The notes below the pieces were generated by a model, which saw only the letters and a list, made by a program, of their open reading frames with translations, ran no database searches and had not been told where the DNA came from. From the IMG/VR virus record IMGVR_UViG_3300025141_000020, positions 1-64,000 of that record: 64,000 bases of DNA. One strand, written 5' to 3'. This document shows, one piece after another, positions 2,913-54,455 of this stretch. Made by a program: the position numbers and the translations under genes. How positions within the stretch are numbered: position 1 is the stretch's first letter; each line of letters opens with the position of its first letter.

Positions 2913-2920
2913 TATAAATA
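2913..2920 (-). promoter_or_regulatory. Class II (putative late) motif TATTTATA
   Basis: The same motif (TATTTAT[A/T/G]) lies on the coding strand upstream of genes at 5509, 7358(+), 11433, 12022, 14303, 15919(+), 17163(+), 17215, 21050, 21918, 26021, 27884, 41865 and 54408. Confidence 0.7.
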
Positions 2921-2938
2921 TGTGTTAAGTATAAAGAA

Positions 2939-3637
2939 TTATAGGGTTTTGATATAGGATATTATATCCATTAGAGCATTAACATCTTTTTCACAATATT
3001 CTTTTATTTCTGAAATGTTATTGTCTTCATAATAGCTTCTATGTATGTTAGTCCCATCTACTTTTCCGTCTTTTGGTGTGTCTAATCCCAACACACTACA
3101 TATTAAATGTAATGCTGATAATCCTTTGTAAGACCCAAAGTTCCATACCTCTTTGGTATCTAGTGCTTTTATTTCCCATGGTTTAGTATCGTGAGAAGGC
3201 ATAATAGGTGAAGGTTTTATCTTATTTACCAACATTCTTTTACCAAGGTAAGGTAAATCAAATGTTTTGATGTTATGTCCACATAATGAAAAATCTAACT
3301 TGTAAACTCTATTTAAAAGTTTAACTGTTTCTTTTAATATCTCTTCTTCACCACCTTTAGTAAATGATTGTATTTTTCTTTCTTTAGCTGTAATGAACCC
3401 TGCACTAACACAAACTATTCTACCAAACTCTGGTAATAGTCCAGCGTATTTCTTAAATAGTTCTCCTTCAGACATTCTTTCATCTTCTGGATAATGTCTT
3501 CTAAAGTAAGACTCACCCATTTTATTCCATAAATTATAAAGAATTGTATTCTTTTCTTCCATTTCTTCTATGGTTGCATAAGACCCACAGGTTTCTATAT
3601 CAAAAAATAGTAATTTATTCTCCTGAATATTTTTCAT
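2939..3637 (-). CDS. DEDDy 3'-5' exonuclease (PolB-exo2-like, stand-alone)
   Basis: Exo I FFDIET, Exo II GHNIKTFD, Exo III YCEKD. Confidence 0.85.
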   Translation of the reverse strand: MKNIQENKLLFFDIETCGSYATIEEMEEKNTILYNLWNKMGESYFRRHYPEDERMSEGELFKKYAGLLPEFGRIVCVSAGFITAKERKIQSFTKGGEEEILKETVKLLNRVYKLDFSLCGHNIKTFDLPYLGKRMLVNKIKPSPIMPSHDTKPWEIKALDTKEVWNFGSYKGLSALHLICSVLGLDTPKDGKVDGTNIHRSYYEDNNISEIKEYCEKDVNALMDIISYIKTL

Positions 3638-3794
3638 CGTTATTTTCGTCTTTTAGTTTTTGGTATGTGTCTGAATCTACACTTACTTGTACTACTCTTT
3701 CGTAAACTCCTGGTTCTCTATTGAAGTATTCTACGGTTTCTCCTTTGTTAAGTGTTTCTACGTCGTCTTCACGTACCCAAATTAGTATTTTCAT
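3615..3794 (-). CDS. Small hypothetical protein (59 aa, not in ORF track)
   Basis: MKILIWVREDDVETLNKGETVEYFNREPG...; fills the gap, with an ATGA overlap to the upstream ORF. Confidence 0.55.
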   Translation of the reverse strand: MKILIWVREDDVETLNKGETVEYFNREPGVYERVVQVSVDSDTYQKLKDENNDEKYSGE

Positions 3795-3907
3795 GTTTTT
3801 GGCTTTTTATTTTTTAAAAAAATATATTCTGTGATGGTCCATCCTATACATACCATAATAATACATACGAATGTTATTCCCAATATTTGTGTTATTGTTT
3901 CAATCAT
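3791..3907 (-). CDS. Small single-pass membrane peptide (38 aa, not in ORF track)
   Basis: MIETITQILGITFVCIIMVCIGWTITEYIFLKNKKPKT; Bacteroidota-type TATCTTTG box at 3912-3919 just upstream. Confidence 0.5.
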   Translation of the reverse strand: MIETITQILGITFVCIIMVCIGWTITEYIFLKNKKPKT

Positions 3908-3949
3908 AGCACAAAGATAATAAAAATTTATTTAATAATAAAATCTAGA

Positions 3950-5491
3950 CTAAGATTTTTCGTTTTTTATTTCTTCTTCTGGAAAAGGTAGTTTTAAGTT
4001 TGTAACCTCATCCATTATACCATCCACTTTAAAGTCCTCTGTTTTTGATATTGTGTCATCACCACTTAGTGTGTGTATAGTAACAGTATTATCTATCTCG
4101 TTAAAGTGACTTAACACCACTTTCCTCATATTTTTCCCTTCTGGTGTATGTATATCTAGTACCCATTGTTTTGGGTATGCTCCCCACATATTGGTATTAT
4201 TTCTAAACTTTAGGTGGTCCATTAGTTTTTTAAATACCTCCCGGTTATTTTTTGAGTCTTCGTAATTTCCTTTGTATTTTTCATCAATCTCATCTAATGT
4301 CCTCATCATAGCATAATTTATATCCTTCAATCCATCCTCGTCTATATCCCATGCATCATACCATGAATCTGACAAATTATACCCAATTTCATTTATGTCC
4401 CATTCCCTTAACTCACTAAAATTGTTTATCCCTCCACTACCTATTAATTGTAGTAACTGAGGATAACTTATCTTGGTGTAAAAGCCGTTGGTGGTAGCTT
4501 CCATTTCATATGTTACTTCCTGTTTAATTTCGTCTGCGACCGCTTCTTGTCTAGCTCTCCATACAGCGCACCCTATAGCCTCTAACACTTCCCACTGACT
4601 ATCGTCCCACTCTGTTCTAAAGTATCCTGTTAGAAAATTATCATATACACCTTCTGAATTAAAGATAGTAGTTTGACTGGTGGGGTTTATACCCTCCTCT
4701 TTCCAGTAATCTGGTTCGTATCTATTAACAATATCTATAAATTTTTCATTGGTTTTAGGTGAGAAGTGGTGGTCTATATATGTTAGTTCGTCATCGCTCA
4801 TCTCCTCACAGTCAGTATATGTTCCCATTGCAGAATCAAATGCCCAATCTTCATCTCCATCAATAACCAAATATGATTCTTTATATAAAGATGTAGGCGT
4901 AAACAACTCAATACCCCAATCTGAAAACTCTATAGTTTCAGTATCTTCCATATTATAAGGTGATATGTGGTCTCCTGCTAAAACTACATCATCACCAAAA
5001 AAATTATCAAGTTTGTCGATATTTCTTTCCAAATTTCTGGAACCACCTTCAATTATATCGTACACCGCTTTAGCAAATTGGTTTTTCTTAGAAAACCCTA
5101 GTAGTTCGTCCTCGGTATAAGGCATATTAAATTTTATTCTTTGTTTTGGGCTGTATCTTAACTTTAGTAGTTTAGAAATTTCTTGTTTGTGTGCAAGTAT
5201 TTTATGGGGTGTTCCGGCATTGTAACTCAATTCACTGAATAGAAGATAATCTCCGCTGTATAGGGTCGGCATTTTGGACCCTGTGTCTACGATAATGTAA
5301 CTTTTATCGTTAATTAATAATATGTAGGGGAATCCAACTGAACCTTTTATACGGTTTTCAGTGTGAGGCTGGACATCTTTTACCCAAGGTACTAATTCTT
5401 TTGTTGCTCCAAAATTAAGTGGTAGTATAAGTTTTCCGTCTTTACCATCGTAGAGTACTCTATGGTTTTTTATTTCTGTAAGATTATTCAT
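3950..5491 (-). CDS. Acidic hypothetical protein (513 aa), probably late
   Basis: Long ORF; TATTTATA motif at 5509-5516; no recognised domain. Confidence 0.75.
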   Translation of the reverse strand: MNNLTEIKNHRVLYDGKDGKLILPLNFGATKELVPWVKDVQPHTENRIKGSVGFPYILLINDKSYIIVDTGSKMPTLYSGDYLLFSELSYNAGTPHKILAHKQEISKLLKLRYSPKQRIKFNMPYTEDELLGFSKKNQFAKAVYDIIEGGSRNLERNIDKLDNFFGDDVVLAGDHISPYNMEDTETIEFSDWGIELFTPTSLYKESYLVIDGDEDWAFDSAMGTYTDCEEMSDDELTYIDHHFSPKTNEKFIDIVNRYEPDYWKEEGINPTSQTTIFNSEGVYDNFLTGYFRTEWDDSQWEVLEAIGCAVWRARQEAVADEIKQEVTYEMEATTNGFYTKISYPQLLQLIGSGGINNFSELREWDINEIGYNLSDSWYDAWDIDEDGLKDINYAMMRTLDEIDEKYKGNYEDSKNNREVFKKLMDHLKFRNNTNMWGAYPKQWVLDIHTPEGKNMRKVVLSHFNEIDNTVTIHTLSGDDTISKTEDFKVDGIMDEVTNLKLPFPEEEIKNEKS

Positions 5492-5523
5492 ATTATATAG
5501 TGTTATACTATAAATATTAGGAA

Positions 5524-5760: not shown

Positions 5761-5764
5761 ATTA

Positions 5765-5956
5765 TTATCTTTTACAGCTTCCTCTGATTTCATATTTGTG
5801 TCCACTATCACTGTTTTCATTTAACATTGTAGCGATTCGTACCGCTTCTTCTTTCTTTGTAATATCCCATATTTGTGATAGTCCGTCCGTTAATAAGACG
5901 TGAGTTTTTTTACCCGTTTTAAGGTCCATCATTACTTTTATTATATTATATGCCAT
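5765..5956 (-). CDS. Hypothetical protein (63 aa)
   Basis: Operon-like tiling. Confidence 0.65.
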   Translation of the reverse strand: MAYNIIKVMMDLKTGKKTHVLLTDGLSQIWDITKKEEAVRIATMLNENSDSGHKYEIRGSCKR

Positions 5957-6131
5957 TTTTATATTTTTTATTTAATAGTTTTACGTAAAAATCTGCCACT
6001 CCTGGACCTAGATTATCTTCCCATTTCTTTTTAAAATTATTAATTAAATTTCTTAATGCAGGTAAATGAATAAATTTATTATTCTTATTATTTAATACTC
6101 TCATTACAAAATCAAAATCTTTTTTAATCAT
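5946..6131 (-). CDS. Hypothetical protein (61 aa)
   Basis: Directly downstream of a class I promoter. Confidence 0.6.
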   Translation of the reverse strand: MIKKDFDFVMRVLNNKNNKFIHLPALRNLINNFKKKWEDNLGPGVADFYVKLLNKKYKNGI

Positions 6132-6135
6132 AATA

Positions 6136-6166
6136 CAAATATAAAAATTATTTTTTACTTATTCAA
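6136..6166 (-). promoter_or_regulatory. Class I promoter TTGAAT-N17-TATATTTG (Bacteroidota -33/-7 type)
   Basis: Exact TAnnTTTG with TTG 20 nt upstream. Confidence 0.7.
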
Positions 6167-7202
6167 CTACCTCTAACTTAACTTTTAAAGTATTTAAAAT
6201 TCTTTTGGTTATCTTATATGGGTCTCCATTACTTGCTGGCCTTCTATCTTCTATATGCCCTTTCCAGTTATTTTGTACCGTGGAAACTGGAATTCTTATA
6301 CTAGCTCCTCTATCGGATACACCATAACTAAACTTTTCAATAGATTGTGTTTCGTGTAATCCAGTAAGTCTTTTTTCATTGTCACTCCCATAGTTGTTAA
6401 TATGTTCTTCATGATAGAAAGAAAAAGTATCACAAATACCTTCTATCATATCTTTTCCACCAAGTTCTCTCATTTTTTTGGTTGAGAAGTTCACATGCAT
6501 TCCTGAACCATTCCAGTCACCGTTTACTGGTTTTGGGTGTAATTCTACTGTAACTCCGTGGCTTTCTGTAATTCTATAAAGTAGGTATCTGCTAACCCAT
6601 AGGTCATCTGAAACTTTTAGTGCTCCTTTACCGAATAGTTGATATTCCCATTGTCCTAACATTACCTCAGCGTTGACACCGGTAATATCTAACCCAATAT
6701 TCATACATGCATCTAAATGTTGTTCTACAATTTCTCTACCAATAACTCTATCTGTCCCAACTCCACAATAGTATTTTCCTTGTGGTTCTGGATATCCTTC
6801 TTTGGGGAATCCTAGGGGTTTACCATCTTTCATTAATACATACTCTTGTTCGAATCCAAACCACCATTCCTCTTGGTGTCTGTGAAAATCGATATCCTCC
6901 AATTCTGCTCTTTCGTTAGTCTTGTGTGAAATACCTTTTTCATTTAATACTTCACATAATGCAAGATAAGACCCAACTCTTTGTGGGTCTGGGTAAACTC
7001 TCACTGGTCTTAGGATACAATCTGAATTATTGCCCACGGCTTGTTGTGTGGAACTACCGTCGAATGACCATTCTGGTAAATCTTCTAGGTTTGGTGTGGT
7101 AATCGTACCATTTAATTCTACAATTTTAGTTTTACTTCTTAAAGTTTGTTCTGGTTTAGTTCCGTCTAACCAGATATATTCAATCTTTGTTTTTATTGTC
7201 AT
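6159..7202 (-). CDS. glnII: Glutamine synthetase type II (auxiliary metabolic gene)
   Basis: EYIWLDG, WSFDGSST, GFEQEY, PQGKYYCGVG, NAEVMLGQWEYQ, WNGSGMH, RLTGLHET, RGASIRIP, EDRRPASNGDPY. Confidence 0.95.
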   Translation of the reverse strand: MTIKTKIEYIWLDGTKPEQTLRSKTKIVELNGTITTPNLEDLPEWSFDGSSTQQAVGNNSDCILRPVRVYPDPQRVGSYLALCEVLNEKGISHKTNERAELEDIDFHRHQEEWWFGFEQEYVLMKDGKPLGFPKEGYPEPQGKYYCGVGTDRVIGREIVEQHLDACMNIGLDITGVNAEVMLGQWEYQLFGKGALKVSDDLWVSRYLLYRITESHGVTVELHPKPVNGDWNGSGMHVNFSTKKMRELGGKDMIEGICDTFSFYHEEHINNYGSDNEKRLTGLHETQSIEKFSYGVSDRGASIRIPVSTVQNNWKGHIEDRRPASNGDPYKITKRILNTLKVKLEVVE

Positions 7203-7353: not shown

Positions 7354-7370
7354 TTTATATTTATAATCAT

Positions 7371-7682
7371 ATGAATGTTATTTTAAATAATAAAGAAATT
7401 CCGGTAGAAATTATGTCTACCCCTAATAGTATTTCTACTGGCATGATGGGTAGAGACCATTTAGATGGTGGTATGTTGTTTGTTTTTGAGGATGTAGGCG
7501 AACGTTCTTTCTGGATGAAAAATTGTTTGATACCTTTAGATATCATTTTTATGGTTAATGGTGAAGTTAGTGAGGTTTACGAAAATTGTGTTCCTTGTGA
7601 ATCAGAGCCTTGTGAAAGATATTGGGGTTTGGCTGATAAAGTTTTAGAATTAAATGGTGGGGAATATTTAAAATTTATATGA
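7371..7682 (+). CDS. DUF192 family protein
   Basis: GMMGR...GMLFVF...SFWMKNCLIPLDIIF...VLELNGG. Confidence 0.9.
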   Translation: MNVILNNKEIPVEIMSTPNSISTGMMGRDHLDGGMLFVFEDVGERSFWMKNCLIPLDIIFMVNGEVSEVYENCVPCESEPCERYWGLADKVLELNGGEYLKFI

Positions 7683-9616
7683 AAAGAAAAAAATTAATAT
7701 TATCTAAAAGTAGTCTTATAGATTTAATATGTGAGACGGTACTAGAAGTCTCTAATATTAATGAGGGAGGAGATACAGACACAGTTATGCCGACACGTAA
7801 ATCTCTTGGATTAGGTGGTAAAACAGCTTTAGATAGTAAGACATCTTCTTTTGTAAAAGCACAAAAAGATTCTAGTGAACACATTGGACATACAGATTAT
7901 GGATATAGTCCACACGCAGGGTGGAAACAGTTTTGGGCTGATTGGCAAAATGACGATTTCTATATCGGCGATAAGCATAGTCAGTATTGTCATAGCTGTG
8001 GACTCGGTTATCACGGATATGCCGAGGGAAATATAGATGAAGACGCGAAATTTAGTTATATACAATCTGGAACTGGTGATTTAGTTGCTGATGCAAATGA
8101 TATACAAAGCTATTTAAAAAACGAAGTGGGTGACAAATACAAGAACCTCGGAACAGATGGTACTTTTGGTGATGAAACAGCAAAAGCTGTAGGTGCTTAC
8201 TTAGGGTACCCGAATATTACATCAAAGGTGAAATTATTAGAATACCTTGCACCTAAATACCCAGATGAATTTGGGACAAAAGGTAAATCTGGTTATGGAA
8301 TTGGTGGTAAATCACAAGGAATAATAGCAGACCTATTGTCTGCAAAATGTGTAAAGGATTTGAGGGAGTGTATGGACAAATCTGATTTTGCAACAAAACA
8401 CGGTAAGACAAGAGAAGAATTTGCAGATATGTTTTGGAAGGCAGCTGTTAAAGCTAGAACAGAGGCTATAGATTGGATTATAGAGTTTTATAGTGACAAA
8501 AACCCAGATAATTTCAATAAACTTATTCCGGAAGATGAGCAGTTTAAAAATTTCTATTCTCTTTGGACTCTAAAAGACATAGTTGCCGCTATGCAAAATA
8601 ACCAGGATTTAGGTTTATCGAAATATGAGCTGCAGGGTTTAAATTACTTGAGGATGGACGTTTATAGTAAACTGCGTAATAAATTAGAAGAGATGAAGGG
8701 AGAGGAGAAGTATGAAACAGACTTAGACTACGGTGTATTTTCTAAATCACTTAGAATATTCTTTTGTTGTGAAGGGGATTTTTTTGCTTGGGTTAACGAT
8801 TCCCAATCTCTGTATCGATATAATGTAAATTTATATACTTTTCTTAACCCGAGTGAAGAGGGTTGGGAACATGACATGTTTAGTTCAACCTTACATGAAT
8901 TAGGACATATTGTAGATAATATTCTTTTGAAAGACCTGGGGGTAAAACCCTATCCGGGAGATATATATCAGGATGAAGATAAAACGACAGACTACTTGAA
9001 CCCTCCTCCTAAAGATAAGGATAAGAGAGGCCCTTATGTCACTAGAAAATCTGAGCTTTATGCGAGAATGTTTAATCTTAGACATTATTTTGATGTAAAG
9101 TCCACTATAAGTGGTGAAGCATGGGCTCAAGCATGGATGAAGAAGGTTAATAAGGGTGATATAATTTGGAATCCAGAAAAGACATTTGATGACCTTCCTG
9201 TACCTGAGTTTGGAATTTCTAAAGTTGGTGATAAGGTCTATTTGGAATTAACCTTTGAGCTTGTGTGTCGTCTATGGAGTGGTAAACGGTGGCAGAAGAT
9301 ATGTAGGGACCCTGAAAAATGGACGTATGGTGATATATGGGATTTTACTACATTTATAAAATATAAGATAGGTGATAAGGAGACATTTTCTACTGAACAT
9401 GGACTGGGAGCGTTACTAGCTACTTTTACTTTTGACCCTAACAAATTTGAAGTTGATAATAAAGACCCAGATGTTTTCTGGATTGTCTTTGATTTTAATA
9501 AGATTGCAGAAGCTAATAGATTATACGTAATGATGGACCCAAATGAGTTGGTGACTGATTCAGAGGAGTTTGCTGCCTTGGAAAATCTATATGACGGACT
9601 TCCAAAACCAAGTTAA
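7679..9616 (+). CDS. Peptidoglycan-binding-domain + HExxH zinc metalloprotease (645 aa)
   Basis: PGBD-like IQSYL...DGTFGDETAKAV; zincin LHELGH with downstream SELYAR; leader LILSKSSLIDLICETVLE. Confidence 0.65.
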   Translation: MKRKKLILSKSSLIDLICETVLEVSNINEGGDTDTVMPTRKSLGLGGKTALDSKTSSFVKAQKDSSEHIGHTDYGYSPHAGWKQFWADWQNDDFYIGDKHSQYCHSCGLGYHGYAEGNIDEDAKFSYIQSGTGDLVADANDIQSYLKNEVGDKYKNLGTDGTFGDETAKAVGAYLGYPNITSKVKLLEYLAPKYPDEFGTKGKSGYGIGGKSQGIIADLLSAKCVKDLRECMDKSDFATKHGKTREEFADMFWKAAVKARTEAIDWIIEFYSDKNPDNFNKLIPEDEQFKNFYSLWTLKDIVAAMQNNQDLGLSKYELQGLNYLRMDVYSKLRNKLEEMKGEEKYETDLDYGVFSKSLRIFFCCEGDFFAWVNDSQSLYRYNVNLYTFLNPSEEGWEHDMFSSTLHELGHIVDNILLKDLGVKPYPGDIYQDEDKTTDYLNPPPKDKDKRGPYVTRKSELYARMFNLRHYFDVKSTISGEAWAQAWMKKVNKGDIIWNPEKTFDDLPVPEFGISKVGDKVYLELTFELVCRLWSGKRWQKICRDPEKWTYGDIWDFTTFIKYKIGDKETFSTEHGLGALLATFTFDPNKFEVDNKDPDVFWIVFDFNKIAEANRLYVMMDPNELVTDSEEFAALENLYDGLPKPS

Positions 9617-9941: not shown

Positions 9942-9967
9942 AAAAGGTCCTTCGGGACCTTTTTTTA
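9942..9967. terminator. Bidirectional intrinsic terminator with a UUCG tetraloop
   Basis: AAAAGGTCC-TTCG-GGACCTTTTTTT between convergent genes. Confidence 0.9.
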
Positions 9968-9988: not shown

Positions 9989-11428
9989 CTAACTACCAAT
10001 TTTCTCTTTGATGGTATTAACTAGTTCTTTTTGTACCCATTTAACAAACTCAACATACCTTGTAGGTTTACTGTCCGCTTTTTTCTTCCATGTGCCTTCT
10101 GGGTTTCTAGTGGCTCTACTAAAGAAGTTTAGTCCACTTATATTGGTTATGCATTTATGCCCACCACTATTAGCTTGTATAACGTCCCAAGCTGGCACTG
10201 TTATTTTATCTAATACTATTTTTTGTTTTTCACTTAAATTATCCCAAGGGGTATCAATAATATCAATTGCCATGTTATAGTATTGTGAACCCTCTTTTGG
10301 CATATTTTGTAGGTGGTCTTTGTATAACGCGAATAAATCTGAAGTTTTAAAGCCAATACTATCATCTTGTGCTTTTGTTTCACCAACTCTCTTAATTACT
10401 GAAATAGGTATCATATGTGCTTTTAATTGTGGTTCTATTTTTTTAAGTACTTCTTGAGCTATATCTCCTAAGTTAACACCTTTAAGAGCTCTATCCTTTT
10501 TAAATGGATTGCACGAAGCTTGTACTAACCCCATTGGCCAAGCAACTACGAAGAAATCAGCTTCTGGGTATATTTTAAATGGTGTGTATCTATCATAAGA
10601 ACCCGGTTTAAATAATGCACCACCACCATATTGTACTATTATATTACCATCTAAAGTTAAATTATCACTTTCTTGTTGGGATTTGATGTATTCGGCTTGG
10701 TTTTGTGCCATATCTTCAGGTGAAGCAAATCCTTTTTCTTTTGCATATGAAGTTATATTTTGGTATATGTTTAGTAGGGATGGGGTAGAGTTCATTACCA
10801 GATTTTCTAAGAACCCAGGTTTATTTTTATAAGCTAATAATAACTTATTAGTTAAAAGACCTAACATCCATTTCTTTTCATATGCTTGGTCACCTTTTTC
10901 AAAATCCCTAATTAAGTTCATTACTTGTTCTGGTTCAATATCGTGTTTTGCGTAGTCTGCAGAATCTACGGTATTAATCATCATAATATCTTCATTACTA
11001 AAAATATCACTAGGACTTATGGTTTGTGAGATGGTTTCTACGTTTGACCTTGCTCCTTTAAATTGTGTTGCGGTGTCATCTTCAACACCTGCTTGTGAGT
11101 CATGGTGGTCTGTATGTATCTTAAAGATTGGTTTGCCGTGTGCAAAATCTACAAGTACCGGCATTACATCACCGCTTGCGTCTGGTTTTTTAACAGAAAA
11201 TTCTTTATCCCCATATTGTATAACATGTGAACCTATAACATCAATCCCATAGCTTTCAAGATAATTTTTCATTCCTAATGCTGATACTACTCCGTCTAGG
11301 TCTTGGTGAAAGTATATCTCTGCTTTTGGATATCTGTCTGCTAATTTGTTAATATCCCTAATCCCACCTTCATTTAAAAGTGACCCATTAATATGGTCTA
11401 GTTGTTGTTCTGTTATCTCTATTTTCAT
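9989..11428 (-). CDS. DHH-family phosphoesterase with a capsid-targeting-like leader
   Basis: HQDLDG, VDF, TDHH and C-terminal SGGH (DHHA1) motifs; N-terminus MKIEITEQQLDHINGSLLNE; TATTTATA 4 nt before the ATG. Confidence 0.8.
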   Translation of the reverse strand: MKIEITEQQLDHINGSLLNEGGIRDINKLADRYPKAEIYFHQDLDGVVSALGMKNYLESYGIDVIGSHVIQYGDKEFSVKKPDASGDVMPVLVDFAHGKPIFKIHTDHHDSQAGVEDDTATQFKGARSNVETISQTISPSDIFSNEDIMMINTVDSADYAKHDIEPEQVMNLIRDFEKGDQAYEKKWMLGLLTNKLLLAYKNKPGFLENLVMNSTPSLLNIYQNITSYAKEKGFASPEDMAQNQAEYIKSQQESDNLTLDGNIIVQYGGGALFKPGSYDRYTPFKIYPEADFFVVAWPMGLVQASCNPFKKDRALKGVNLGDIAQEVLKKIEPQLKAHMIPISVIKRVGETKAQDDSIGFKTSDLFALYKDHLQNMPKEGSQYYNMAIDIIDTPWDNLSEKQKIVLDKITVPAWDVIQANSGGHKCITNISGLNFFSRATRNPEGTWKKKADSKPTRYVEFVKWVQKELVNTIKEKIGS

Positions 11429-11442
11429 ATACTATAAATACT

Positions 11443-12006
11443 TTACAATCCTTCTATAAATTTTTGATGCTCTAACTCCCTTCTTTTAGCTAGTCCAGGA
11501 AATTTACTACTAACTCTATAAGTTTTAATTGCTTCCCCTGCTTTTTTATATTCATTAGTATCTAATGTGCCTATACTTTTTAATAGGGATATTACATCAG
11601 CCATTCTTAATCCTGAAGCACCACCATTATAGGATAAAGATAATAAAGCGTCGTACATATTTTGAGTTATTGGTACGTATATTCCTTGGTCCTCCCAATC
11701 CTTAAAAATTTTTCTTAGTCTCTTTGCGTGATAGTTAGAATCTTCTTGTAATTTCTCAGTGGCTTCCTTCTCACAATTTGTACCATCCCCTAATATATCA
11801 CCTTCTTTAACCCCCTCTGTATGTCCATATCCTATTGTCCATTTACCATCACCAATACTATATGCTTTACATTTTAAACCTTCCTCTTTTCTTATATGAC
11901 TCCAATACCATTGTGAAGCTTTTAAACTAGAAGCTCTCATAAAGTTAGAATTATCTAATTGTTCTGAAATTAGTTTAACTTGGTTTTCTGTAATTACTAT
12001 ACGCAT
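11443..12006 (-). CDS. GH24 phage lysozyme (start probably 12006)
   Basis: EEGLKCKAYSIGDGKWTIGYGHT (E-D-T catalytic arrangement), YDALLSLSYNGG, GLAKRRELE; leader MRIVITENQVKLISEQ. Confidence 0.9.
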   Translation of the reverse strand: MRIVITENQVKLISEQLDNSNFMRASSLKASQWYWSHIRKEEGLKCKAYSIGDGKWTIGYGHTEGVKEGDILGDGTNCEKEATEKLQEDSNYHAKRLRKIFKDWEDQGIYVPITQNMYDALLSLSYNGGASGLRMADVISLLKSIGTLDTNEYKKAGEAIKTYRVSSKFPGLAKRRELEHQKFIEGL

Positions 12007-12067
12007 AAAAAAGTCGTTTACAATAAATACAATCATAAACGACTTACTACATAAAGTAGTTATTTAT

Positions 12068-14299: not shown

Positions 14300-14314
14300 A
14301 AACATAAATACCAC

Positions 14315-15893: not shown

Positions 15894-15941
15894 GTTTTGT
15901 TGACTTGTTAAAACTAGATATTTATGTTTAAATAAAAAATT

Positions 15942-16190: not shown

Positions 16191-17199
16191 AGTTTTCTCC
16201 TTCTGACAAACTTTCTAACATTCTTATTTCGTCACCATGTAACTCTTTAGGCATTATAATTTGGGGTTTAATCACCAGGTTGCCCGATTTTCCGTTTGGG
16301 GTTTTCATTCCTTTTCCGTTCACACTAAAATTTCTAGTTATATCGGATAGAGGTGGTACAGTTATTTTTATAGCTCTTTCAAAATGAGGTATTTCTATAG
16401 TCCCTCCAAGAATCATATCCATAATCGGTGTTTGTGGTTCATAAATTAAATCACTAGCTAATAATTTAAAGTGTGGGTGTCTATTTATAACGACCTCTAT
16501 TAGGAGGTCACCAGGATGTCCTTGGTAAATCTCGTCTCCACCACCTTTATAAATAAAAGTTTGTCCTGTTGATAGGTTGGATGGGATTGTAAAGTCTACT
16601 ACCCTATCTTGAGTTATACCTCCCTTTCCTTTACAGTTAGTACAAGGTTTAATAACAATTTTACCTCTCCCTGCACAACTATTACACTGGTGTCTTTGTA
16701 CTTGTCTAAAGAAAGCGTTTCCAGCAACCTTTTCTATATGTCCTGTCCCGTTACACGTACTACAATTAACACTTTCACCACCCGCTCCTACACAAGCAGC
16801 ACAGTTAACGTTTTTTCTATATTTTAACTTTTTTGAATGACTAAAGTACATATCTTCTAAGTCTACTCTTAGTGGTATATTTAAATTTCTACCTTTATTA
16901 ACCCTTTGTTGTCGTTTGCCTCTACCAAAAAATTGACCAAAAAGGTCTTCCATTTCTGGACCACCTCTGTGGTGACTTCTGTGGTGACCACCAAATGGGT
17001 TTTGTTCACCCATGTCATATCTTTGTTTTTTTTCTGGGTTACTTAAGGTATCGTAAGCTTCACTTACTTCTTTAAAAACCGTTTCATTACCGCCTTTATC
17101 TGGGTGATGTTGTTTAGAAAGCTTACGAAAAGCCTTTTTTATGTCATCTTGTGATGAATCTCTATTTATATTTAGAGTTTTATAGTAATCTTTAATCAT
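16174..17199 (-). CDS. dnaJ: DnaJ (Hsp40) chaperone
   Basis: J-domain HPD, four CxxCxGxG zinc repeats, C-terminal GDL motif. Confidence 0.95.
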   Translation of the reverse strand: MIKDYYKTLNINRDSSQDDIKKAFRKLSKQHHPDKGGNETVFKEVSEAYDTLSNPEKKQRYDMGEQNPFGGHHRSHHRGGPEMEDLFGQFFGRGKRQQRVNKGRNLNIPLRVDLEDMYFSHSKKLKYRKNVNCAACVGAGGESVNCSTCNGTGHIEKVAGNAFFRQVQRHQCNSCAGRGKIVIKPCTNCKGKGGITQDRVVDFTIPSNLSTGQTFIYKGGGDEIYQGHPGDLLIEVVINRHPHFKLLASDLIYEPQTPIMDMILGGTIEIPHFERAIKITVPPLSDITRNFSVNGKGMKTPNGKSGNLVIKPQIIMPKELHGDEIRMLESLSEGENFKIKK

Positions 17200-17835
17200 A
17201 TGAGTTATAACAGAAATAAATATAAAATTATACTATTTAAGAACGGTAAAAGAGTTAAATGCTTTTTCTCGTCCAATAGTTACAAAAGTATCTTAAGAAA
17301 ATATAGTAATATAATTAATGAAAAGAAACCTAAATTCGTAATAGAATATCTTTCTCGTAAAAAAGTTAGGTTTGAGTTGGGTGTCGTAACTACCGAATCT
17401 ACAGATGATAGTATATTTGTTAAAGACGAGTTGGGTAGGACCAAAGAGGTTACTATGGACAACACTGTATACAATATAGTTAAGTTATTGCCTTACTGGA
17501 AGGAAGAGTTGGTGTATGACCACACTTCTAAGTGTAAAATAACTTACCTGGAGTTTTTATCTCAATATCTTAATTATAAGGACTTTAAACAGGTATTCAC
17601 ATTAAATAACAAATTAATTGTACAAAATGAAGATGAGTTTAGTCTTTTTAGTTTAAAAACTGTTTCAGATGCTTTGCGTTTAATAGATATTATCGAGTTT
17701 GAGTTAATGGACGCTGGTAGAATGGACTGTCTGTTTGTTAGAGATACCAATACTGTGCAACGTAAACAACTATATGATTTGTTAGAACGTAAGGGTTATG
17801 ATAGAGGATTTCTTAGGAAACAATACACTTATTAA
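17200..17835 (+). CDS. Hypothetical protein (211 aa)
   Basis: Long ORF filling the gap between minus-strand genes. Confidence 0.75.
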   Translation: MSYNRNKYKIILFKNGKRVKCFFSSNSYKSILRKYSNIINEKKPKFVIEYLSRKKVRFELGVVTTESTDDSIFVKDELGRTKEVTMDNTVYNIVKLLPYWKEELVYDHTSKCKITYLEFLSQYLNYKDFKQVFTLNNKLIVQNEDEFSLFSLKTVSDALRLIDIIEFELMDAGRMDCLFVRDTNTVQRKQLYDLLERKGYDRGFLRKQYTY

Positions 17836-21038: not shown

Positions 21039-21062
21039 AATCTTTTTATTATAAATATCTTA

Positions 21063-21913: not shown

Positions 21914-21925
21914 TACTTATAAATA

Positions 21926-26007: not shown

Positions 26008-26028
26008 AGAATCTTTATTCTATAAATA

Positions 26029-26829
26029 TCATTCAGATAGGTACTCTAGCAGTTGATAGCTATCATTTCTTAATTTTCTTAAAGCTTTTTCTTTTATTTG
26101 TCTAACTCTCTCTTTTGTTAATGATAGTTCGTCCCCTATTTCTTGTAGTGTCATAGGCGTTCCTGCAAGACCATAATAGTCTTTTATAATACCTCTTTCT
26201 CTGCTATCTAATATATCCATTAAAGTGCCTAGTTCTGTTTTTAAATTAACCTCATCATCAAAAACATCTTCTGGATTGTCAGCATTATCATTTTTTAACA
26301 TATCTATTAATGTATCACCTTCATCATTTATTGGTTTATCATAATTTATGGTAGTTGGTAATAAAGCTAGTTTACTGTCAAACTGGGTTATCTCTTTTTC
26401 AGTTTTTTTCTTTTCTTTTTGTAAAGCTTGTATAACATTAACTGGATACCTTATGGTTCTAGCGTGTTCATTTAAGGACTGTAGTATTGATTGTTTTACC
26501 CACCACACAGCGTAAGATATAAACCTAAATCCCTTGTCCCAATCAAAGTTTTTGATAGCCTTTAATAACCCTAGATTACCTTCCGCTATTAAATCACTCA
26601 ATGGAATTCCTTGGTTTTGGTAGTCTTTTGCCACACTTATAACAAACCTTAGATTACCTTCTAGTAATTCTCTATGGATTTCTTCTATTTCTTTTTGTGT
26701 TATATTTGGTGATTTAATTTTTTTTGCAAGCAACTTTTCTCTATCTGGTGTTAGTACTTTAACTTTTCTAACGTCTTTTAGGTAGTGTGAAATTTCTGCT
26801 TGATTTATGAAGATGTTGTTTTTTGCCAT
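26029..26829 (-). CDS. Phage-encoded sigma-70 factor, RpoD-like, Bacteroidota type (no region 1.1)
   Basis: Region 1.2 YLKDV, region 2 NLRFVISVAK...DLIAEGNLGL...FDWDKGFRFISYAVWWVKQSI, region 4 TLQEIG..LSLTKERVRQIKEKALRKLR. Confidence 0.93.
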   Translation of the reverse strand: MAKNNIFINQAEISHYLKDVRKVKVLTPDREKLLAKKIKSPNITQKEIEEIHRELLEGNLRFVISVAKDYQNQGIPLSDLIAEGNLGLLKAIKNFDWDKGFRFISYAVWWVKQSILQSLNEHARTIRYPVNVIQALQKEKKKTEKEITQFDSKLALLPTTINYDKPINDEGDTLIDMLKNDNADNPEDVFDDEVNLKTELGTLMDILDSRERGIIKDYYGLAGTPMTLQEIGDELSLTKERVRQIKEKALRKLRNDSYQLLEYLSE

Positions 26830-26916
26830 GTTTATATTTTTTATATTAATAATCTACAATAAGTGTACCACACTAAGTTATACGACATTATGTCAGTATA
26901 GTTGTGAATACAGAGG

Positions 26917-26947
26917 CAAAAATACAAAAATAAATTTATATGAACAA
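26917..26947 (-). promoter_or_regulatory. Class I promoter TTGTTC-N17-TATTTTTG upstream of the sigma gene
   Basis: Exact Bacteroidota TTG-N20-TAnnTTTG geometry. Confidence 0.75.
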
Positions 26948-26964
26948 GTTTTGATTAAAAGAGT

Positions 26965-27879: not shown

Positions 27880-27892
27880 ATATAATAAATAT

Positions 27893-41849: not shown

Positions 41850-41886
41850 ATTTTTTTCTTTATTTATAAATACATTTTATATCACT

Positions 41887-52400: not shown

Positions 52401-53241
52401 CTAGTTGTCTTTCACTTTCATCACCATTAGGCTTTAAGTAAAATTTTGTGGTGGTGGATGTCACTGCTGTACCAAAAGGGTCTCCCTCTACTATTATTTC
52501 TATAAAAGATGACCCTATAGTTTGTGCTATAAAGTCAACAACTTTATATTCTTGAGTACCGACATTATTATTAAAAGTTAAAACATAATCTTTATACTCA
52601 TTTGTTATATTTCTTAATTTAGATACCTTACCTTCAGCGATTTTAGTTATTGTATTTGCTGTATTACCTAGATTTTCTAAATTTAATATAACTTCTTCTG
52701 GTGACAAATGTCCGTCTAATAGATTTCCATTTGTTGTAAATTCTATATTAAATGGGTTGGATATGTAATTAACATCACACTTAAAGGTTGTTCTATTTGT
52801 TGTGATGTTATAACTTATATTATACGCTGTAGTATATCCGGTTGTTTCATAGATATCGGTACCATCAAAATATAATGCTGCGGGAAATGTGTTGATGATG
52901 TTATCTACAGCAACATTTAACCTTTTCTTTAGGGAGCCATATAAAACAAAACTACTTAAATCACTAGTGTCGTTATTTATAAAAACCTCTAAATTATTGC
53001 TAGCTGTAGTTCTTGCTATCTCTAGATTAGCTATGCCTAGTGTTGATAATGTTATTGGGTTGGAGAAACTATTTATTTCGTACCCTACTGGCACTGGATT
53101 ACTTATATCTTGCGCAAAAGAGAATGTGCTATTGGTCATTTGTGATGACCCGTCAGTTATTTGGTTTCCGACTAAATTATCACTAAATGTTTCACTGCCG
53201 TTTGGTGGTGCTGGAGGGTATCGGAATCTATTACTTGCCAT
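49477..53241 (-). CDS. Baseplate wedge-like structural protein
   Basis: LYRRILLN..YLFKSKGTRKAIEFLL resembles the P2 gpI-type KGT motif; 1254 aa. Confidence 0.6.
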   Translation of the reverse strand: MASNRFRYPPAPPNGSETFSDNLVGNQITDGSSQMTNSTFSFAQDISNPVPVGYEINSFSNPITLSTLGIANLEIARTTASNNLEVFINNDTSDLSSFVLYGSLKKRLNVAVDNIINTFPAALYFDGTDIYETTGYTTAYNISYNITTNRTTFKCDVNYISNPFNIEFTTNGNLLDGHLSPEEVILNLENLGNTANTITKIAEGKVSKLRNITNEYKDYVLTFNNNVGTQEYKVVDFIAQTIGSSFIEIIVEGDPFGTAVTSTTTKFYLKPNGDESERQLGSLKGVEAFLMTRNVIPIYTAKFKIVKETSEGVKFYDYINKTWPLGDDVNLDVVSSAYIDYLKGLADIGDELDNIKTNLVSRFLTSPTLKEFDTPDQKVEKTLQIYGRSFDDIKTFVDGIAYMTNVTYDGKNNIPNGLIKNFARTLGWSTPSTLDKVGFLDSVLGVSKPTYSGSSVGMTPAELDIELYRRILLNTGYLFKSKGTRKAIEFLLTLVGAPEALIEFNEYVVLADTKINMNTPLSFVWDDNSLNAMTTGGTYHYEQAQNKFTRSWSTLSGGTYTSSTINYSVPLSQWYYETGATSHNFQRSDYPIDNEGFPVRPRVTNNYFFQRGAGWFQRTEEHKSDIIVNRDKSILTGCTPTIVNKFENFTWGGFWTGGEYSNRIKAPYLDRFRRFPHMYFGFGLTRMIDDKKSWNRKEPQLETRDWVYDTRASYYQTQDERLVLNVKNVDISLNIGQALVYDVYRQSVEYGCFFSANTNSMTGGTLYSTFQTSIDDTGKWFGANYSQTVVGQTDDGTPYTGSKFRSGGAGSHDGGFASNKNFRRSKGALLRFEVCVNDTSPQTIIGFSPGTLTTNDISTPPNVTHFVESIFFTGRNIKVYSDANNSGSATEQGTNVLGSNVWTSGVDKFFKGEIRLKEGGGAIYTLYADGSPHVMSTFETYGNVLEDVKVFVSEDDSGGASGQFLILNYIYVFDETIAGLSIDTRNMNFKRFLNNFWKVLIDVRDRMTINDGKTGGYPVLQQIYLQYLQEVCANNNQYTYTKMLSYVRELGTYWLKLVEEMVPATTLWTSGEKVENSAFHRDKFVYRCFNPSGNTMPIIPQILITGPALSGYTSYPQARMASTPMMMSLPAPPTSGSLYFNNIISGGTYNPISSYANQYNINNQNRASGSELVREVTNRLANRYHSNKDKYLSQSIFTKQGATDNILNIDGLKCFGANTQAWIENYNIAPTNIVGNNTNQGAQSYNIKSSSFNY

Positions 53242-53251
53242 AATTCCGAAT

Positions 53252-54172
53252 TTAAACTTTTATATTACTAAAAATCTTACCGAAATCTATATTATTACCT
53301 CTATTTTGCCTAACCTCATATAATTGGTCGTTATATTGGTCTCTAACCTCATATAAGTCGTATTGAGCGTAGATGTTGTTGTTACCAGATAAATCATATA
53401 AAGTGTAAATACCGTCATCGATAGATTTAGTTTGATTACCGTAAGCTGCTATTGCTAATGTTTCAAAGTCGTGGTCTACCATTTCAATATCTAACACCAA
53501 TGGATTAAAAAATGTATTAGTTATTATAACCTTTTGACCTGGTTGTCCAATAAATGGTATAGCGTTTGGATTATTAGAAGGTGCACTAGTTGGTGTTAGT
53601 GTACAAAAAATTAAATTAGTTTGTTTATTAGTATAAACATATCTTGGTGATATTTGATTTGGATTAGATAGGTTTGCTGTTACTGGTTCACAAAAAAAGT
53701 TAGACGTTACTACTCTGAAAAAATTATGTATTTTTTCGTTATTTAGTTGTAGGTATTCTATTCTATATCCAACTAGTCCGTGTGGTTGAAATCTACTTCT
53801 AAATTCTGTTGGTATGTTATTTAAGTCGAATACTAACCCTTTAACGTTTGGTAGTGATGATAGTATCCCACAATCAATAATTTCTGTTCTGATTTCTGCA
53901 GGTCTTATGTAGACAGTGTATATTCCTTTATTTGCAAAAATATTGGATGGGAGACTTAGGTTATATAATCCACCTAACACCTCTATTCCAGCAGATGCTG
54001 GACCCCCAGTGCCCCCTGCATGGTAATATGGGGTAAGTACCGAATTTGCTTGTAATTTAAATAGTGTAGTTGTACTGGTAGCGTCTCTATTAGGTGCTGC
54101 GTGTACAATCACTTCCATATCATCTGGAAGTACATCAGCTGGTCTCTTTATTCCGTATGCTCCTAATGCCAT
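53252..54172 (-). CDS. Putative structural protein (306 aa)
   Basis: Position in the late operon; no recognised domain. Confidence 0.6.
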   Translation of the reverse strand: MALGAYGIKRPADVLPDDMEVIVHAAPNRDATSTTTLFKLQANSVLTPYYHAGGTGGPASAGIEVLGGLYNLSLPSNIFANKGIYTVYIRPAEIRTEIIDCGILSSLPNVKGLVFDLNNIPTEFRSRFQPHGLVGYRIEYLQLNNEKIHNFFRVVTSNFFCEPVTANLSNPNQISPRYVYTNKQTNLIFCTLTPTSAPSNNPNAIPFIGQPGQKVIITNTFFNPLVLDIEMVDHDFETLAIAAYGNQTKSIDDGIYTLYDLSGNNNIYAQYDLYEVRDQYNDQLYEVRQNRGNNIDFGKIFSNIKV

Positions 54173-54175
54173 ATA

Positions 54176-54397
54176 TTAAGGTTGTTTGTCAATTTTATAA
54201 AATCCTCTACCGTGTAATGCTAATTCACCTAGATTCGGTACTTGTCCTAGTCTTTGTGGTCTCTCAAAAACACTAATTCTGCCTCTTTCTATGAATATAT
54301 TCGACCTAACTTCTGGTCTCTCACATACATTCATTAATACCTCTTCTTTTGTTAAGGGTATTATACATCCGGTTACATCAACTTTTTGTAAAGGCAT
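54176..54397 (-). CDS. Small late protein (73 aa)
   Basis: PLTKEEVLMNV.ERPEVRSNIFIERG; own TATTTATA at 54408-54415. Confidence 0.7.
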   Translation of the reverse strand: MPLQKVDVTGCIIPLTKEEVLMNVCERPEVRSNIFIERGRISVFERPQRLGQVPNLGELALHGRGFYKIDKQP

Positions 54398-54455
54398 CGT
54401 TTTTTATTATAAATATCTGTGTACTCATTTATTTGTTTCATTAGGCACATAATTT

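What the first reader, a model, noticed from the sequence alone, without database searches (positions are those of the whole stretch)
2913..54415. Recurrent TATTTAT motif just before late genes, paired with a phage sigma factor
Seen: TATTTAT(A/T/G) on the coding strand at 15 sites, flipping with gene orientation (7358, 15919, 17163 on +). It is often only 3-5 nt from the ATG (7371, 11428, 14299, 21913), implying leaderless or near-leaderless mRNA. Variants TACTTATA (680) and TAATTATA (38638) also occur. It is the reverse complement of the T4 late box TATAAATA, so it is not the T4 promoter. Inference: a -10-only late promoter, possibly read by the RpoD-like sigma at 26029-26829.
Basis: partly seen in the sequence, partly recalled or inferred. 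Interest (0 to 1): 0.6.

Follow-up and report, generated by a model that had tools for sequence, protein, structure and literature searches.

The report
T4-type late promoter box TATTTATA

Summary
TATTTAT is not enriched in the window overall (47 copies, about 54 expected) but is sharply positioned. In the window 13 of 64 genes carry it on the coding strand within 40 nt of the start (3 antisense; local shuffles mean 2.2, 0 of 2000 reach 13). In the whole 210-kb contig the count is 52 of 193 genes (3.4 expected). It is invariant at orthologous gene starts in 14-16 related contigs and is the top upstream 7-mer in 80 more distant ones. No -35 element accompanies it, an A-rich stretch follows, and spacing to the ATG is bimodal (4-6 nt, predicted leaderless; 11-19 nt, short leaders). 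The phage is a distant T4 relative (gp20 portal, gp23 capsid, gp17 terminase), and those virion genes are headed by the box. Read in the same orientation, TATTTATA matches T4's late box TATAAATA at 6 of 8 positions. The contig encodes two sigmas: the RpoD-like one in the window, and a 233-aa protein at 137 kb whose family matches the gp55 late-sigma profile (E 7e-6). The best reading is a T4-type late promoter variant read by the gp55-like sigma. Which sigma reads the box is inferred, and no RNA data exist.

The parts
2914..2920 (-). TATTTAT box, 19 nt before the ATG of gene 1401-2894 (497 aa, unknown function)
5510..5516 (-). TATTTAT box, 18 nt before the ATG of gene 3950-5491 (513 aa, unknown function)
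7358..7364 (+). TATTTAT box, 6 nt before the ATG of gene 7371-7682; heads a plus-strand pair with 7679-9616; predicted near-leaderless
11434..11440 (-). TATTTAT box, 5 nt before the ATG of gene 9989-11428 (479 aa); predicted leaderless
14304..14310 (-). TATTTAT box, 4 nt before the ATG at 14299 (ORF 13997-14299); the longer GTG-started ORF call would bury the box
15919..15925 (+). TATTTAT box, 16 nt before the ATG of gene 15942-16190
17163..17169 (+). TATTTAT copy 30 nt before gene 17200-17835, inside the DnaJ CDS on the other strand; weak candidate, kept in only 6 of 13 relatives
17216..17222 (-). TATTTAT box, 16 nt before the ATG of the DnaJ gene 16174-17199, inside the CDS of the divergent gene; kept in 10 of 13 relatives
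21051..21057 (-). TATTTAT box, 12 nt before gene 19728-21038; invariant in 14 of 14 orthologous loci; extended form GATATTTATAATAAAAAG
21919..21925 (-). TATTTAT box, 5 nt before gene 21671-21913, abutting the stop codon of the previous gene; invariant in 14 of 14 loci with the spacing kept; predicted leaderless
26022..26028 (-). TATTTAT box directly after the stop codon of the RpoD-like sigma gene, 14 nt before gene 24643-26007; invariant in 16 of 16 loci
27885..27891 (-). TATTTAT box, 5 nt before gene 27316-27879; invariant in 16 of 16 loci although the protein is only 49-59% identical; predicted leaderless
41866..41872 (-). TATTTAT box, 16 nt before gene 39453-41849 (798 aa); part of the palindrome TATTTATAAATA at 41861-41872
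54409..54415 (-). TATTTAT box, 11 nt before gene 54176-54397; heads a run of giant ORFs (306, 1254, 1387 and 1137 aa), which are assumed, not shown, to be virion proteins
26029..26829 (-). RpoD/RpoS-like phage sigma (266 aa; regions 1.2, 2 and 4). It has no TATTTAT upstream. Alternative, less favoured reader of the box
26917..26948 (-). Host-type (Bacteroidota) promoter TTG-N21-TATTTTTG, ending 87 nt upstream of the sigma gene; suggests that the sigma gene is an early gene read by host sigma-A
   Evidence: consensus from PMC6847099

Best explanation
TATTTAT(A) is the -10-type, -35-less late promoter box of an uncultivated clade of marine T4-like jumbo phages of about 300 kb. Their translation signals and early promoters point to Bacteroidota hosts. 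The box is a two-base variant (TAT-TT-ATA) of the T4 late box TATAAATA.

Proposed mechanism: host core RNA polymerase carries a phage late sigma. The best candidate is the gp55-related 233-aa sigma at contig 137007-137708, outside the window. This holoenzyme melts DNA at the box and starts 5-6 nt downstream of the heptamer, usually at an A.

Where the ATG lies 4-6 nt after the box, the mRNA is leaderless or has 1-2 nt of leader. Where it lies 11-19 nt after, the leader is a 6-14 nt A-rich stretch suited to Shine-Dalgarno-independent initiation.

The RpoD-like sigma in the window is more likely an early gene product that serves the phage's -35/-10-type promoters. That would give a three-step cascade of host sigma-A, then the RpoD-like sigma, then the gp55-like sigma.

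Shown: position, strand bias, invariance, conservation, absence of a -35 element, the association with virion genes, T4 kinship, and the existence and family of both sigmas.

Inferred: that the box is a promoter, where transcription starts, its timing, and which sigma reads it.
For: Enrichment and strand bias.

Phylogenetic footprint: the box is invariant in 14-16 of 14-16 orthologous sites while the flanks drift. It is the top upstream 7-mer in 80 loci whose 233-aa sigma is 51-80% identical (280 of 1843 genes against 20.6 expected). It is kept at the junction after the sigma gene in contigs whose sigma is only 29-33% identical. It is absent from 13 unrelated viral loci (3 of 249 genes).

Anatomy: there is no information upstream of the box, and an A-rich stretch follows, with A at position 12 in 39 of 46 sites. 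Spacing to the ATG is bimodal at 4-6 and 11-19 nt with none at 7-10. This is replicated without any gene model in 91 related loci: 129 sites at 4-6 nt, 1 at 7-8 nt, 155 at 12-16 nt.

Independent geometry: canonical TTGAnn-N17-TAnnnT promoters (17 genes against 3.1 expected) and host-type TAHHTTTG boxes place their -10/-7 element 6 or 4 nt before an ATG. This gives the same predicted +1 as the short TATTTAT class.

Unit boundaries: a terminator-like hairpin with a T-run lies 14-24 nt upstream of the box at 5 of 47 box-led genes against 1 of 146 others (p = 0.0035).

T4 kinship and late genes: Portal_T4 6e-79 and Terminase_6N; Gp23 8e-64. Eight boxes lie in the 17-kb virion module, including one ahead of the capsid operon. 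The replication block at 27.9-38.6 kb has none.

T4 late promoters are an 8-bp box at -13 to -6 with no -35 element, an AT-rich downstream segment, about 50 sites and tight adherence to the consensus (PMC2988020).

The gp55-like sigma: phrog_234 'late sigma' is its only PHROG hit, and 14 of 61 family members hit it. hhalign against a gp55 profile gives E 7e-6 over 111 columns, covering gp55 residues 8-123 with Y10 aligned to Y10. The AlphaFold model (pLDDT 93) has a sigma-2 domain at Z about 9 and 2.5-2.9 A rmsd. The RpoD-like sigma against gp55 aligns over only 32 columns at 8% probability.
Against: There are no RNA data: no sequencing run on record as RNA holds this phage, so transcription starts, timing and promoter activity are untested.

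Both sigmas co-occur in all four of the largest records, so comparative genomics cannot assign the box to one of them.

The 233-aa protein is about as similar to ordinary sigma-2 (E 1.3e-5) as to gp55. It is longer than gp55, and its C-terminal domain may be sigma-4-like (best hit sigma-H region 4, Z 6.1, within the noise range). A sigma-4 domain would normally imply a -35 element.

No gp45 clamp or gp33 homologue was detected, although the Pfam models are narrow and the records incomplete.

The box also precedes non-virion genes: a DnaB-like helicase and DnaJ.

The box lacks the T at -7 that sigma-70-family -10 elements usually need.
Confidence: 0.6

Rival explanations
1. One reading: the box is a -10-only promoter read by the RpoD-like sigma at 26029-26829 bound to host core polymerase.
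For: The protein is a sigma with an intact region 2. It is conserved across the clade together with the box. A host-type promoter upstream of its gene makes it a plausible early product that switches on later genes. A TATTTAT box starts directly after its stop codon.
Against: It has a strong region 4 (Pfam E 1e-17), but the box has no -35 partner. The phage has a separate class of TTGAnn-N17-TAnnnT promoters that fit such a sigma better. It shows almost no similarity to the gp55 late-sigma family. In every studied T4 relative the late box is read by gp55 (PMC2988020), and a gp55-like protein is present here.
Confidence: 0.2
2. The box is read by the host primary sigma-A, alone or redirected by a small phage factor (as T4 AsiA/MotA do at middle promoters), as a degenerate Bacteroidota -7 box.
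For: With the first T at -12, the box matches the host -7 consensus T-12 A-11 H H T-8 T-7 T-6 G-5 at four of its six fixed positions (T-12, A-11, T-8, T-6) and has permitted bases at -10 and -9 (PMC6847099). The -33 element is weak in flavobacteria, so a -7-only look is not unusual.
Against: The two mismatches (A at -7, A at -5) fall on nearly invariant host positions. The phage also carries true host-type boxes (TTATCTTTG) as a distinct class. TATTTGT and TATTTTT variants are not enriched. Such strict invariance across 29-80% sigma divergence points to a dedicated reader.
Confidence: 0.1
3. The motif acts at the RNA level, as UAUUUAU: a translation enhancer, a ribosomal protein bS1 site, or an endonuclease processing site in polycistronic RNA. 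On this reading it is not a promoter.
For: It is always on the sense strand, close to start codons, and often abuts the previous stop codon (8 of 47). A-rich leaders matter for initiation in Bacteroidota (PMC6847099).
Against: The sharp 4-6 nt mode and the empty 7-10 nt interval fit a start-site geometry shared with two other promoter classes. Terminator-like hairpins directly precede the motif. At the capsid operon it lies about 100 nt from the start codon. A U-rich heptamer is the opposite of the A-rich signals known to aid initiation.
Confidence: 0.07

Closest known systems
Bacteriophage T4 late promoters (TATAAATA at -13 to -6) read by gp55, with gp33 and the gp45 sliding clamp
   Same: Both are 8-bp boxes made only of A and T, at the -10 position. 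Neither has a -35 element, and both have an AT-rich segment just downstream. Each genome has about 50 tightly conserved copies, placed ahead of virion genes. The phage has T4-type portal, capsid and terminase proteins and a gp55-related sigma. The boxes agree at 6 of 8 positions in the same orientation.
   Different: The central AA is TT, a box not listed among those reported for T4 relatives in the T4 review (PMC2988020), which mentions only A at -13 and (a/g)C at -13/-12. The candidate sigma is 233 aa, against 185 aa for gp55. It is only about 18% identical to gp55, looks more like an ordinary sigma-2, and has an extra C-terminal helical domain. No gp33 or gp45 was found. A second, RpoD-like sigma is encoded. 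Many transcripts are predicted to be leaderless.
Bacteroidota sigma-A promoters (-33 TTTG / -7 TAnnTTTG)
   Same: The -12 to -5 register is the same. T-12, A-11, T-8 and T-6 are shared. Upstream-element dependence is weak. Translation does not use Shine-Dalgarno sequences and the leaders are A-rich.
   Different: The box has A instead of T at -7 and A instead of G at -5. The phage has separate true host-type boxes. Host mRNAs are mostly leadered (87% over 10 nt; leaderless 5.5%), whereas here leaders are absent or 6-14 nt long.
Phage sigma cascades such as Bacillus phage SPO1 (gp28 for middle genes, gp33/34 for late genes); recalled from my own knowledge
   Same: Several phage-encoded sigmas successively redirect host core polymerase to distinct promoter classes.
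   Different: This phage is unrelated to SPO1. The cascade proposed here would combine a T4-type late sigma with an RpoD-like sigma. I know of no T4 relative in which this has been described; that statement is from memory and has not been tested.

Membership tests
T4-type late promoter / gp55 system | 8-bp box with consensus TATAAATA on the non-template strand | tested here: not met
   The box is TATTTAT(A/T), 6 of 8 identical to the T4 consensus. The exact TATAAATA occurs in sense orientation upstream of only 7 genes, against 35 for TATTTATA.
T4-type late promoter / gp55 system | Box about one helical turn upstream of the start site (-13 to -6) | tested here: inconclusive
   No 5'-end data exist. 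The geometry is inferred from the 4-6 nt spacing to the ATG and from A at position 12 in 39 of 46 sites. This places the first T at -11 to -13.
T4-type late promoter / gp55 system | No conserved -35 element; AT-rich segment just downstream of the box | tested here: met
   Information content is below 0.3 bit at every position from -45 to -2 relative to the box. Positions 7-13 are A/T-rich.
T4-type late promoter / gp55 system | Tens of copies per genome with tight adherence to the consensus | tested here: met
   47-53 gene-proximal sense copies lie in 210 kb. No single-mismatch variant is enriched above background.
T4-type late promoter / gp55 system | Located ahead of late (virion) genes of a T4-related phage | tested here: met
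   Portal_T4, Terminase_6N and the operon holding Gp23 are each headed by the box. The box also precedes a helicase gene and the DnaJ gene.
T4-type late promoter / gp55 system | A gp55-family sigma is encoded | tested here: met
   The ORF at contig 137007-137708 hits phrog_234 at E 8e-4 as its only hit, and 14 of 61 family members hit it. hhalign against a gp55 profile gives E 7e-6, 84% probability and 111 columns including N-terminal segment 1. This is moderate evidence, not proof: the family is about equally close to ordinary sigma-2.
T4-type late promoter / gp55 system | gp33 co-activator and gp45 sliding clamp as activator | tested here: inconclusive
   Pfam gp45 models PF09116 and PF02916 give no hit in this contig or in three relatives up to 93% complete. 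The models are narrow. gp33 was not searched because no model was at hand.
Bacteroidota sigma-A -7 box (TAHHTTTG) | Nearly invariant T-12, A-11, T-8, T-7, T-6 and G-5 | tested here: not met
   The box has A at -7 and A/T at -5. The variants TATTTGT and TATTTTT are not enriched. The consensus is taken from PMC6847099.
Canonical sigma-70 -10 hexamer or extended -10 | TATAAT with T at -7; TGn immediately upstream for extended -10 promoters | tested here: not met
   In the register fixed by the leaderless class, position -7 is A. The base before the box is A in 31 of 46 sites and never T. G is present two bases before the box in only 13 of 46 sites.

The most novel reading that the evidence does not exclude
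The 233-aa protein is an unsplit T4-type late sigma. On this reading a gp55-like sigma-2 module is fused to a C-terminal sigma-4/gp33-like module. The T4 review (PMC2988020) notes that such a 'fused late sigma' has not been found in nature. It would work alongside a second, RpoD-like phage sigma in a three-tier cascade: host sigma-A, then the RpoD-like sigma, then the gp55-like sigma. It would drive largely leaderless late mRNAs in a very large, uncultivated clade of about 300-kb T4-like phages of marine and freshwater Bacteroidota.
Probability: 0.2. Interest if true: 0.7.

Novelty: new variant of a known kind. Interest (0 to 1): 0.5.

Why it matters
If this is right, it gives a ready-made regulatory map for a widespread but uncultivated group of jumbo phages (more than 577 IMG/VR contigs). 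The box marks late transcription units and corrects start codons; for example, it points to the ATG at 14299. It shows that the T4 late box can drift at its centre while keeping its architecture. The gp55-like protein looks intermediate between ordinary sigmas and T4 gp55, which bears on how the split gp55/gp33 system arose. The predicted heavy use of leaderless and very short-leader mRNAs stands out against hosts in which leaderless mRNAs are rare (about 5%). That makes SD-independent and leaderless initiation in Bacteroidota testable with natural templates.

Tried and rejected
- The whole-window count of TATTTAT is not enriched, so the count alone is uninformative. Position-aware tests were needed.
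- Megablast of window DNA against deposited phages found nothing.
- PHROGs, Pfam and the protein atlas gave nothing for most window proteins, including the giant ORFs. 'Virion protein' for those ORFs is therefore an assumption.
- I considered that the true element might be TATAAATA on the opposite strand. I rejected this because the box tracks the downstream ATG at fixed spacing, flips with gene orientation, and has its A-rich flank on the gene side.
- A presence/absence test to separate the two sigmas failed, because both occur together in all large records.
- A covariation test of box against sigma failed, because the box is unchanged even at 29-33% sigma identity and those contigs are only 1-2 kb long.
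- phmmer and tblastn of the 233-aa protein against PDB and phage records were uninformative. Foldseek alone gave only weak E-values.
- The fold of the C-terminal domain is not resolved (Z 6.1).
- The gp45 clamp searches were blank.
- The sequencing-run search found only DNA metagenome contigs. Read laying was therefore not used, since contigs cannot show transcript ends.
- The generic sigma-70 consensus scan of the window shows no enrichment (89 against 89.6).
- The same-composition spacing controls are contaminated by the other promoter classes, so I did not use them as a null.

Full report
**What the window is.** The window is the first 64 kb of a single 210,568-bp viral contig with 33.6% GC. 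IMG/VR classes it as linear, and CheckV rates it about 66% complete. Gene density is about 95%, and most window genes lie on the minus strand. Only 10 of 193 genes have any Shine-Dalgarno-like 4-mer. Leaders are depleted in G, with A at -3 in 123 of 193 genes and A-rich positions at -11 to -14. This is the translation-initiation signature described for Bacteroidota (PMC6847099).

Pfam identifies a T4-type portal (Portal_T4, 5.6e-79), a T4-type large terminase and a Gp23-type major capsid protein (8.3e-64) elsewhere on the contig. The phage is therefore a distant T4 relative. Related contigs reach 270-311 kb at 88-93% completeness. All sequencing runs that hold the window are labelled marine metagenomes or carry coded organism names.

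**Checking the observation.** The heptamer is not over-represented in the window as a whole: 47 copies on both strands against 53.6 +/- 7 in shuffles. Its placement is far from random.

- Fourteen copies lie on the coding strand 4-30 nt upstream of a start codon, and they flip with gene orientation.
- With a hand-curated gene list, 13 of 64 genes have a sense copy within 40 nt and 3 have an antisense copy.
- Dinucleotide-preserving shuffles of those same AT-rich upstream segments give a mean of 2.2 and a maximum of 7. None of 2000 shuffles reaches 13. Among all 21 permutations of the same base composition the next best has 6.
- On the whole contig, TATTTAT is the most enriched upstream 7-mer: 52 of 193 genes against 3.4 expected, with 16 antisense. 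Thirty-five of the 78 genomic copies of TATTTATA sit in sense within 50 nt of a start.
- Every single-base variant falls back to the 1-5-fold, strand-symmetric enrichment of any AT-only word.
- The copy at 12023-12029 lies in the loop of a 14-bp terminator-like hairpin.

**Anatomy.** I aligned 46 gene-proximal sites on the box. There is no information at any position from -45 to -2, so no -35 or -33 element. The base before the box is A in 31 of 46 sites and never T, partly because a stop codon abuts the box at 8 of 47 sites. The eighth base is A (35) or T (9). An A-rich run follows, and A at position 12, counted from the first T as 0, occurs in 39 of 46 sites.

The distance from the heptamer to the ATG is bimodal: 4-6 nt at 13 sites, 11-19 nt at most of the rest, and none at 7-10 nt. 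A count that needs no gene model, run on 91 distinct related loci, reproduces this. It finds 129 sites at 4-6 nt, 1 at 7-8 nt and 155 at 12-16 nt.

**Conservation.** Sixteen marine-virome contigs encode a sigma 76-79% identical to the window's. At the starts orthologous to 24643-26007 and 27316-27879 the box is identical in 16 of 16 contigs. At 21671-21913 and 19728-21038 it is identical in 14 of 14. Flanking bases vary, and the downstream proteins can be as little as 43-60% identical; the 4-5 nt spacing is kept. The DnaJ site is kept in 10 of 13 contigs, and the site at 17163 in only 6 of 13.

In 80 further loci, found through the second sigma at 51-80% identity, TATTTAT is again the top upstream 7-mer: 280 of 1843 genes against 20.6 expected. 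Three short contigs whose sigma is only 29-33% identical still carry the box at the junction after the sigma gene, twice right after a hairpin. Thirteen unrelated viral loci show 3 hits among 249 genes.

**Why a promoter.** Three independent lines support this.

- Other promoter classes share the geometry. The contig has canonical TTGAnn-N17-TAnnnT dyads ahead of 17 genes against 3.1 expected. In the window these precede the primase gene 33581-34495, 27893-30220, the DruA-like gene 14683-15858 and 5946-6131. Many place the hexamer exactly 6 nt before the ATG.
- The contig also has true Bacteroidota-type promoters, TTG-N19-21-TTATCTTTGTAGT, several with the G of the -7 box 4 nt before an ATG. 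Both geometries put the predicted +1 on the A of the ATG. The 5-nt TATTTAT class does the same if its first T is at -12.
- Terminator-like hairpins with T-runs lie 14-24 nt upstream of the box at 5 of 47 box-led genes against 1 of 146 others (Fisher p = 0.0035). The same arrangement precedes the box ahead of the capsid operon.

The empty 7-10 nt interval would fit two modes of initiation, leaderless and with a leader of at least about 6 nt. That reading is inference from my own knowledge.

**Which genes.** The 17-kb virion module (147-164 kb) carries eight boxes, including those ahead of the portal, the terminase and the operon containing the capsid gene. In the window, the replication block at 27.9-38.6 kb (primase, PD-(D/E)XK nuclease, metallophosphoesterase) has no sense copy upstream of any gene and uses -35/-10-type promoters instead. 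The boxes at 54409 and 41866 head runs of very large ORFs with no family match. The 32-kb sugar and glycosyltransferase block (112.8-144.8 kb) has only three boxes.

The distribution therefore fits a late class, but not exclusively. A DnaB-like helicase and the DnaJ gene are also box-led.

**Relation to T4.** The T4 box is nearly palindromic, so in the same orientation the two agree at six of eight positions (TAT-AA-ATA against TAT-TT-ATA).

The T4 review describes late promoters as an 8-bp box about one helical turn upstream of the start. There is an AT-rich stretch just downstream and no -35 conservation. About 50 sites adhere tightly to the consensus. They are read by gp55, a minimal sigma similar to other sigmas only in domain 2, and gp55 and gp45 are core genes of all T4 relatives (PMC2988020). 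Every architectural point is matched here, but the exact consensus is not.

**Two sigmas.** The ORF at 26029-26829 is an RpoD/RpoS-like sigma with regions 1.2, 2 and 4. It hits phrog_351 at 1e-55 and is about 35% identical to the best phage and bacterial sigmas. It has no box upstream. A host-type promoter ends 87 nt upstream of it, and a clade-conserved GGTACAC..ATTGTA element lies closer to the gene.

A second sigma-like ORF lies at contig 137007-137708 (233 aa), outside the window.

- Its only PHROG hit is phrog_234, 'late sigma transcription factor' (8e-4), and it is the only such hit on the contig.
- Its family is large: 1187 representatives at 50% clustering and more than 577 IMG/VR contigs. 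Fourteen of 61 members hit phrog_234, and no other family recurs.
- A profile of the family finds SigA region 2 (2.5e-3) and T4 gp55 (0.13) among PDB sequences.
- The AlphaFold model (pLDDT 93) matches only sigma factors in the top 50 rows. Sigma-2 superposes at Z about 9 and 2.5-2.9 A rmsd over about 90 residues.
- Against a gp55 family profile built from seven T4-like phages, hhalign gives E 7e-6, 84% probability and 111 columns. These cover gp55 residues 8-123, including the gp55-specific N-terminal segment, with the invariant Y10 aligned to gp55 Y10 (single-sequence comparison).
- The RpoD-like family against the same profile aligns over only 32 columns at 8% probability.
- The two phage sigmas resemble each other only across regions 1.2-2.
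- The C-terminal 100 residues of the 233-aa protein, folded alone (pLDDT 89), find sigma-H region 4 as the best of 48,161 chains. The Z of 6.1 is within the noise range for small helical domains.

**Assignment.** This phage is a T4 relative, the box is T4-like in every architectural respect, and the 233-aa protein is the only gp55-like protein on the contig. The most economical reading is therefore that the 233-aa protein reads TATTTATA. The RpoD-like sigma, with its full region 4, would serve the -35/-10-type promoters.

This is inference. Both sigmas are present in all four of the largest related records, so co-occurrence cannot separate them. No gp45 or gp33 homologue was found, and no RNA run holds the phage. 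My estimates are about 0.85 that the box is a promoter element. Given that, I put about 0.6-0.65 on the gp55-like sigma, 0.2-0.25 on the RpoD-like sigma and about 0.1 on host sigma-A.

**Novelty.** Full-text searches found no phage paper describing TATTTAT(A) as a promoter. The thing itself is a new variant of a known kind: a T4-type late promoter with a changed core. It occurs in an undescribed clade that also carries a second sigma and appears to rely on leaderless or very short-leader mRNAs. In flavobacterial hosts leaderless mRNAs are about 5% of the total, and 87% of leaders exceed 10 nt (PMC9723704, PMC6847099).

**Limits.** Gene starts come from my own ORF-based calls. Functional labels rest on Pfam and PHROG hits. 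The host phylum is inferred from translation and promoter signals only. Read laying was not used, because only DNA contigs were available.

Noticed in passing
contig G000 171559-171967 (+), outside the window (L037:7559-7967): The phage encodes a full-length tmRNA: Rfam RF00023 at 123 bits, with an ARAGORN tag peptide ending in VAIA. A host-type promoter ends at 171343, upstream of it.
   Followed up: partly
window 6136-6166 (-) and 26917-26948 (-); about 10 intergenic sites on the contig: True Bacteroidota-type promoters of the form TTG-N19-21-TA(H)(H)TTTG, often as TTATCTTTGTAGT. Several have the ATG 4 nt after the G, so they are predicted leaderless. They suggest the host phylum and an early promoter class.
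   Followed up: partly
window, upstream of 5946-6131, 14683-15858, 27893-30220 and 33581-34495 (all -): Canonical sigma-70-like TTGAnn-N17-TAnnnT promoters with the hexamer 6 nt before the ATG (for example TTGACT-17-TATAAT before the primase gene). Across the contig they precede 17 genes against 3.1 expected, and they are conserved in relatives. This could be the promoter class read by the RpoD-like sigma.
   Followed up: partly
window 26855-26869 (-): The element GGTACAC(T/A)(T/A)ATTGTA lies between the host-type promoter and the RpoD-like sigma gene and is conserved in 16 of 16 relatives. Its function is unknown; an operator, a second promoter or a leader element are possibilities.
   Followed up: no
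window 17197-17202: The DnaJ gene (16174-17199, -) and gene 17200-17835 (+) start back to back (CAT|ATG), so each gene's upstream region lies inside the other's coding sequence. The DnaJ-side box is conserved and the other is not.
   Followed up: partly
window 12011-12045 (-) and 9942-9963 (both strands): There are strong terminator-like hairpins. The first (14 bp) covers the annotated ATG of ORF 11443-12036 and holds a TATTTAT in its loop, so that ORF's start is doubtful. The second is a bidirectional terminator between convergent genes.
   Followed up: no
window 54456-63107 (-); contig 194122-202968 and 80142-86201: Giant ORFs of 2883, 2948 and 2019 aa have no PHROG match. The 2883-aa ORF, the only one scanned against Pfam, has no Pfam hit above cut-off and has a clearly higher GC content (0.41 against 0.33).
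   Followed up: no
window 6159-7202, 12068-12967, 14683-15858, 16174-17199; contig 112.8-144.8 kb: Host-like genes are present: a glutamine-synthetase-like gene, a PLP-dependent (PALP) enzyme, a Druantia DruA-like protein, a full DnaJ, and a 32-kb block of glycosyltransferase and nucleotide-sugar genes (GDP-mannose dehydratase, CMP-sugar synthase).
   Followed up: no
window 7679-9616 (+): The 645-aa protein has a sub-threshold Pfam hit to the ATLF domain (anthrax lethal factor N/C domain; E 0.003, 17.6 bits against a cut-off of 27.4). The hit is too weak to interpret.
   Followed up: no
related record G002 (IMG/VR contig of 310,691 bp), 176350-177153: The RpoD-like sigma homologue in this 93%-complete relative has one in-frame TAA within the match. 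This could be a sequencing error, a split gene or a pseudogene.
   Followed up: no
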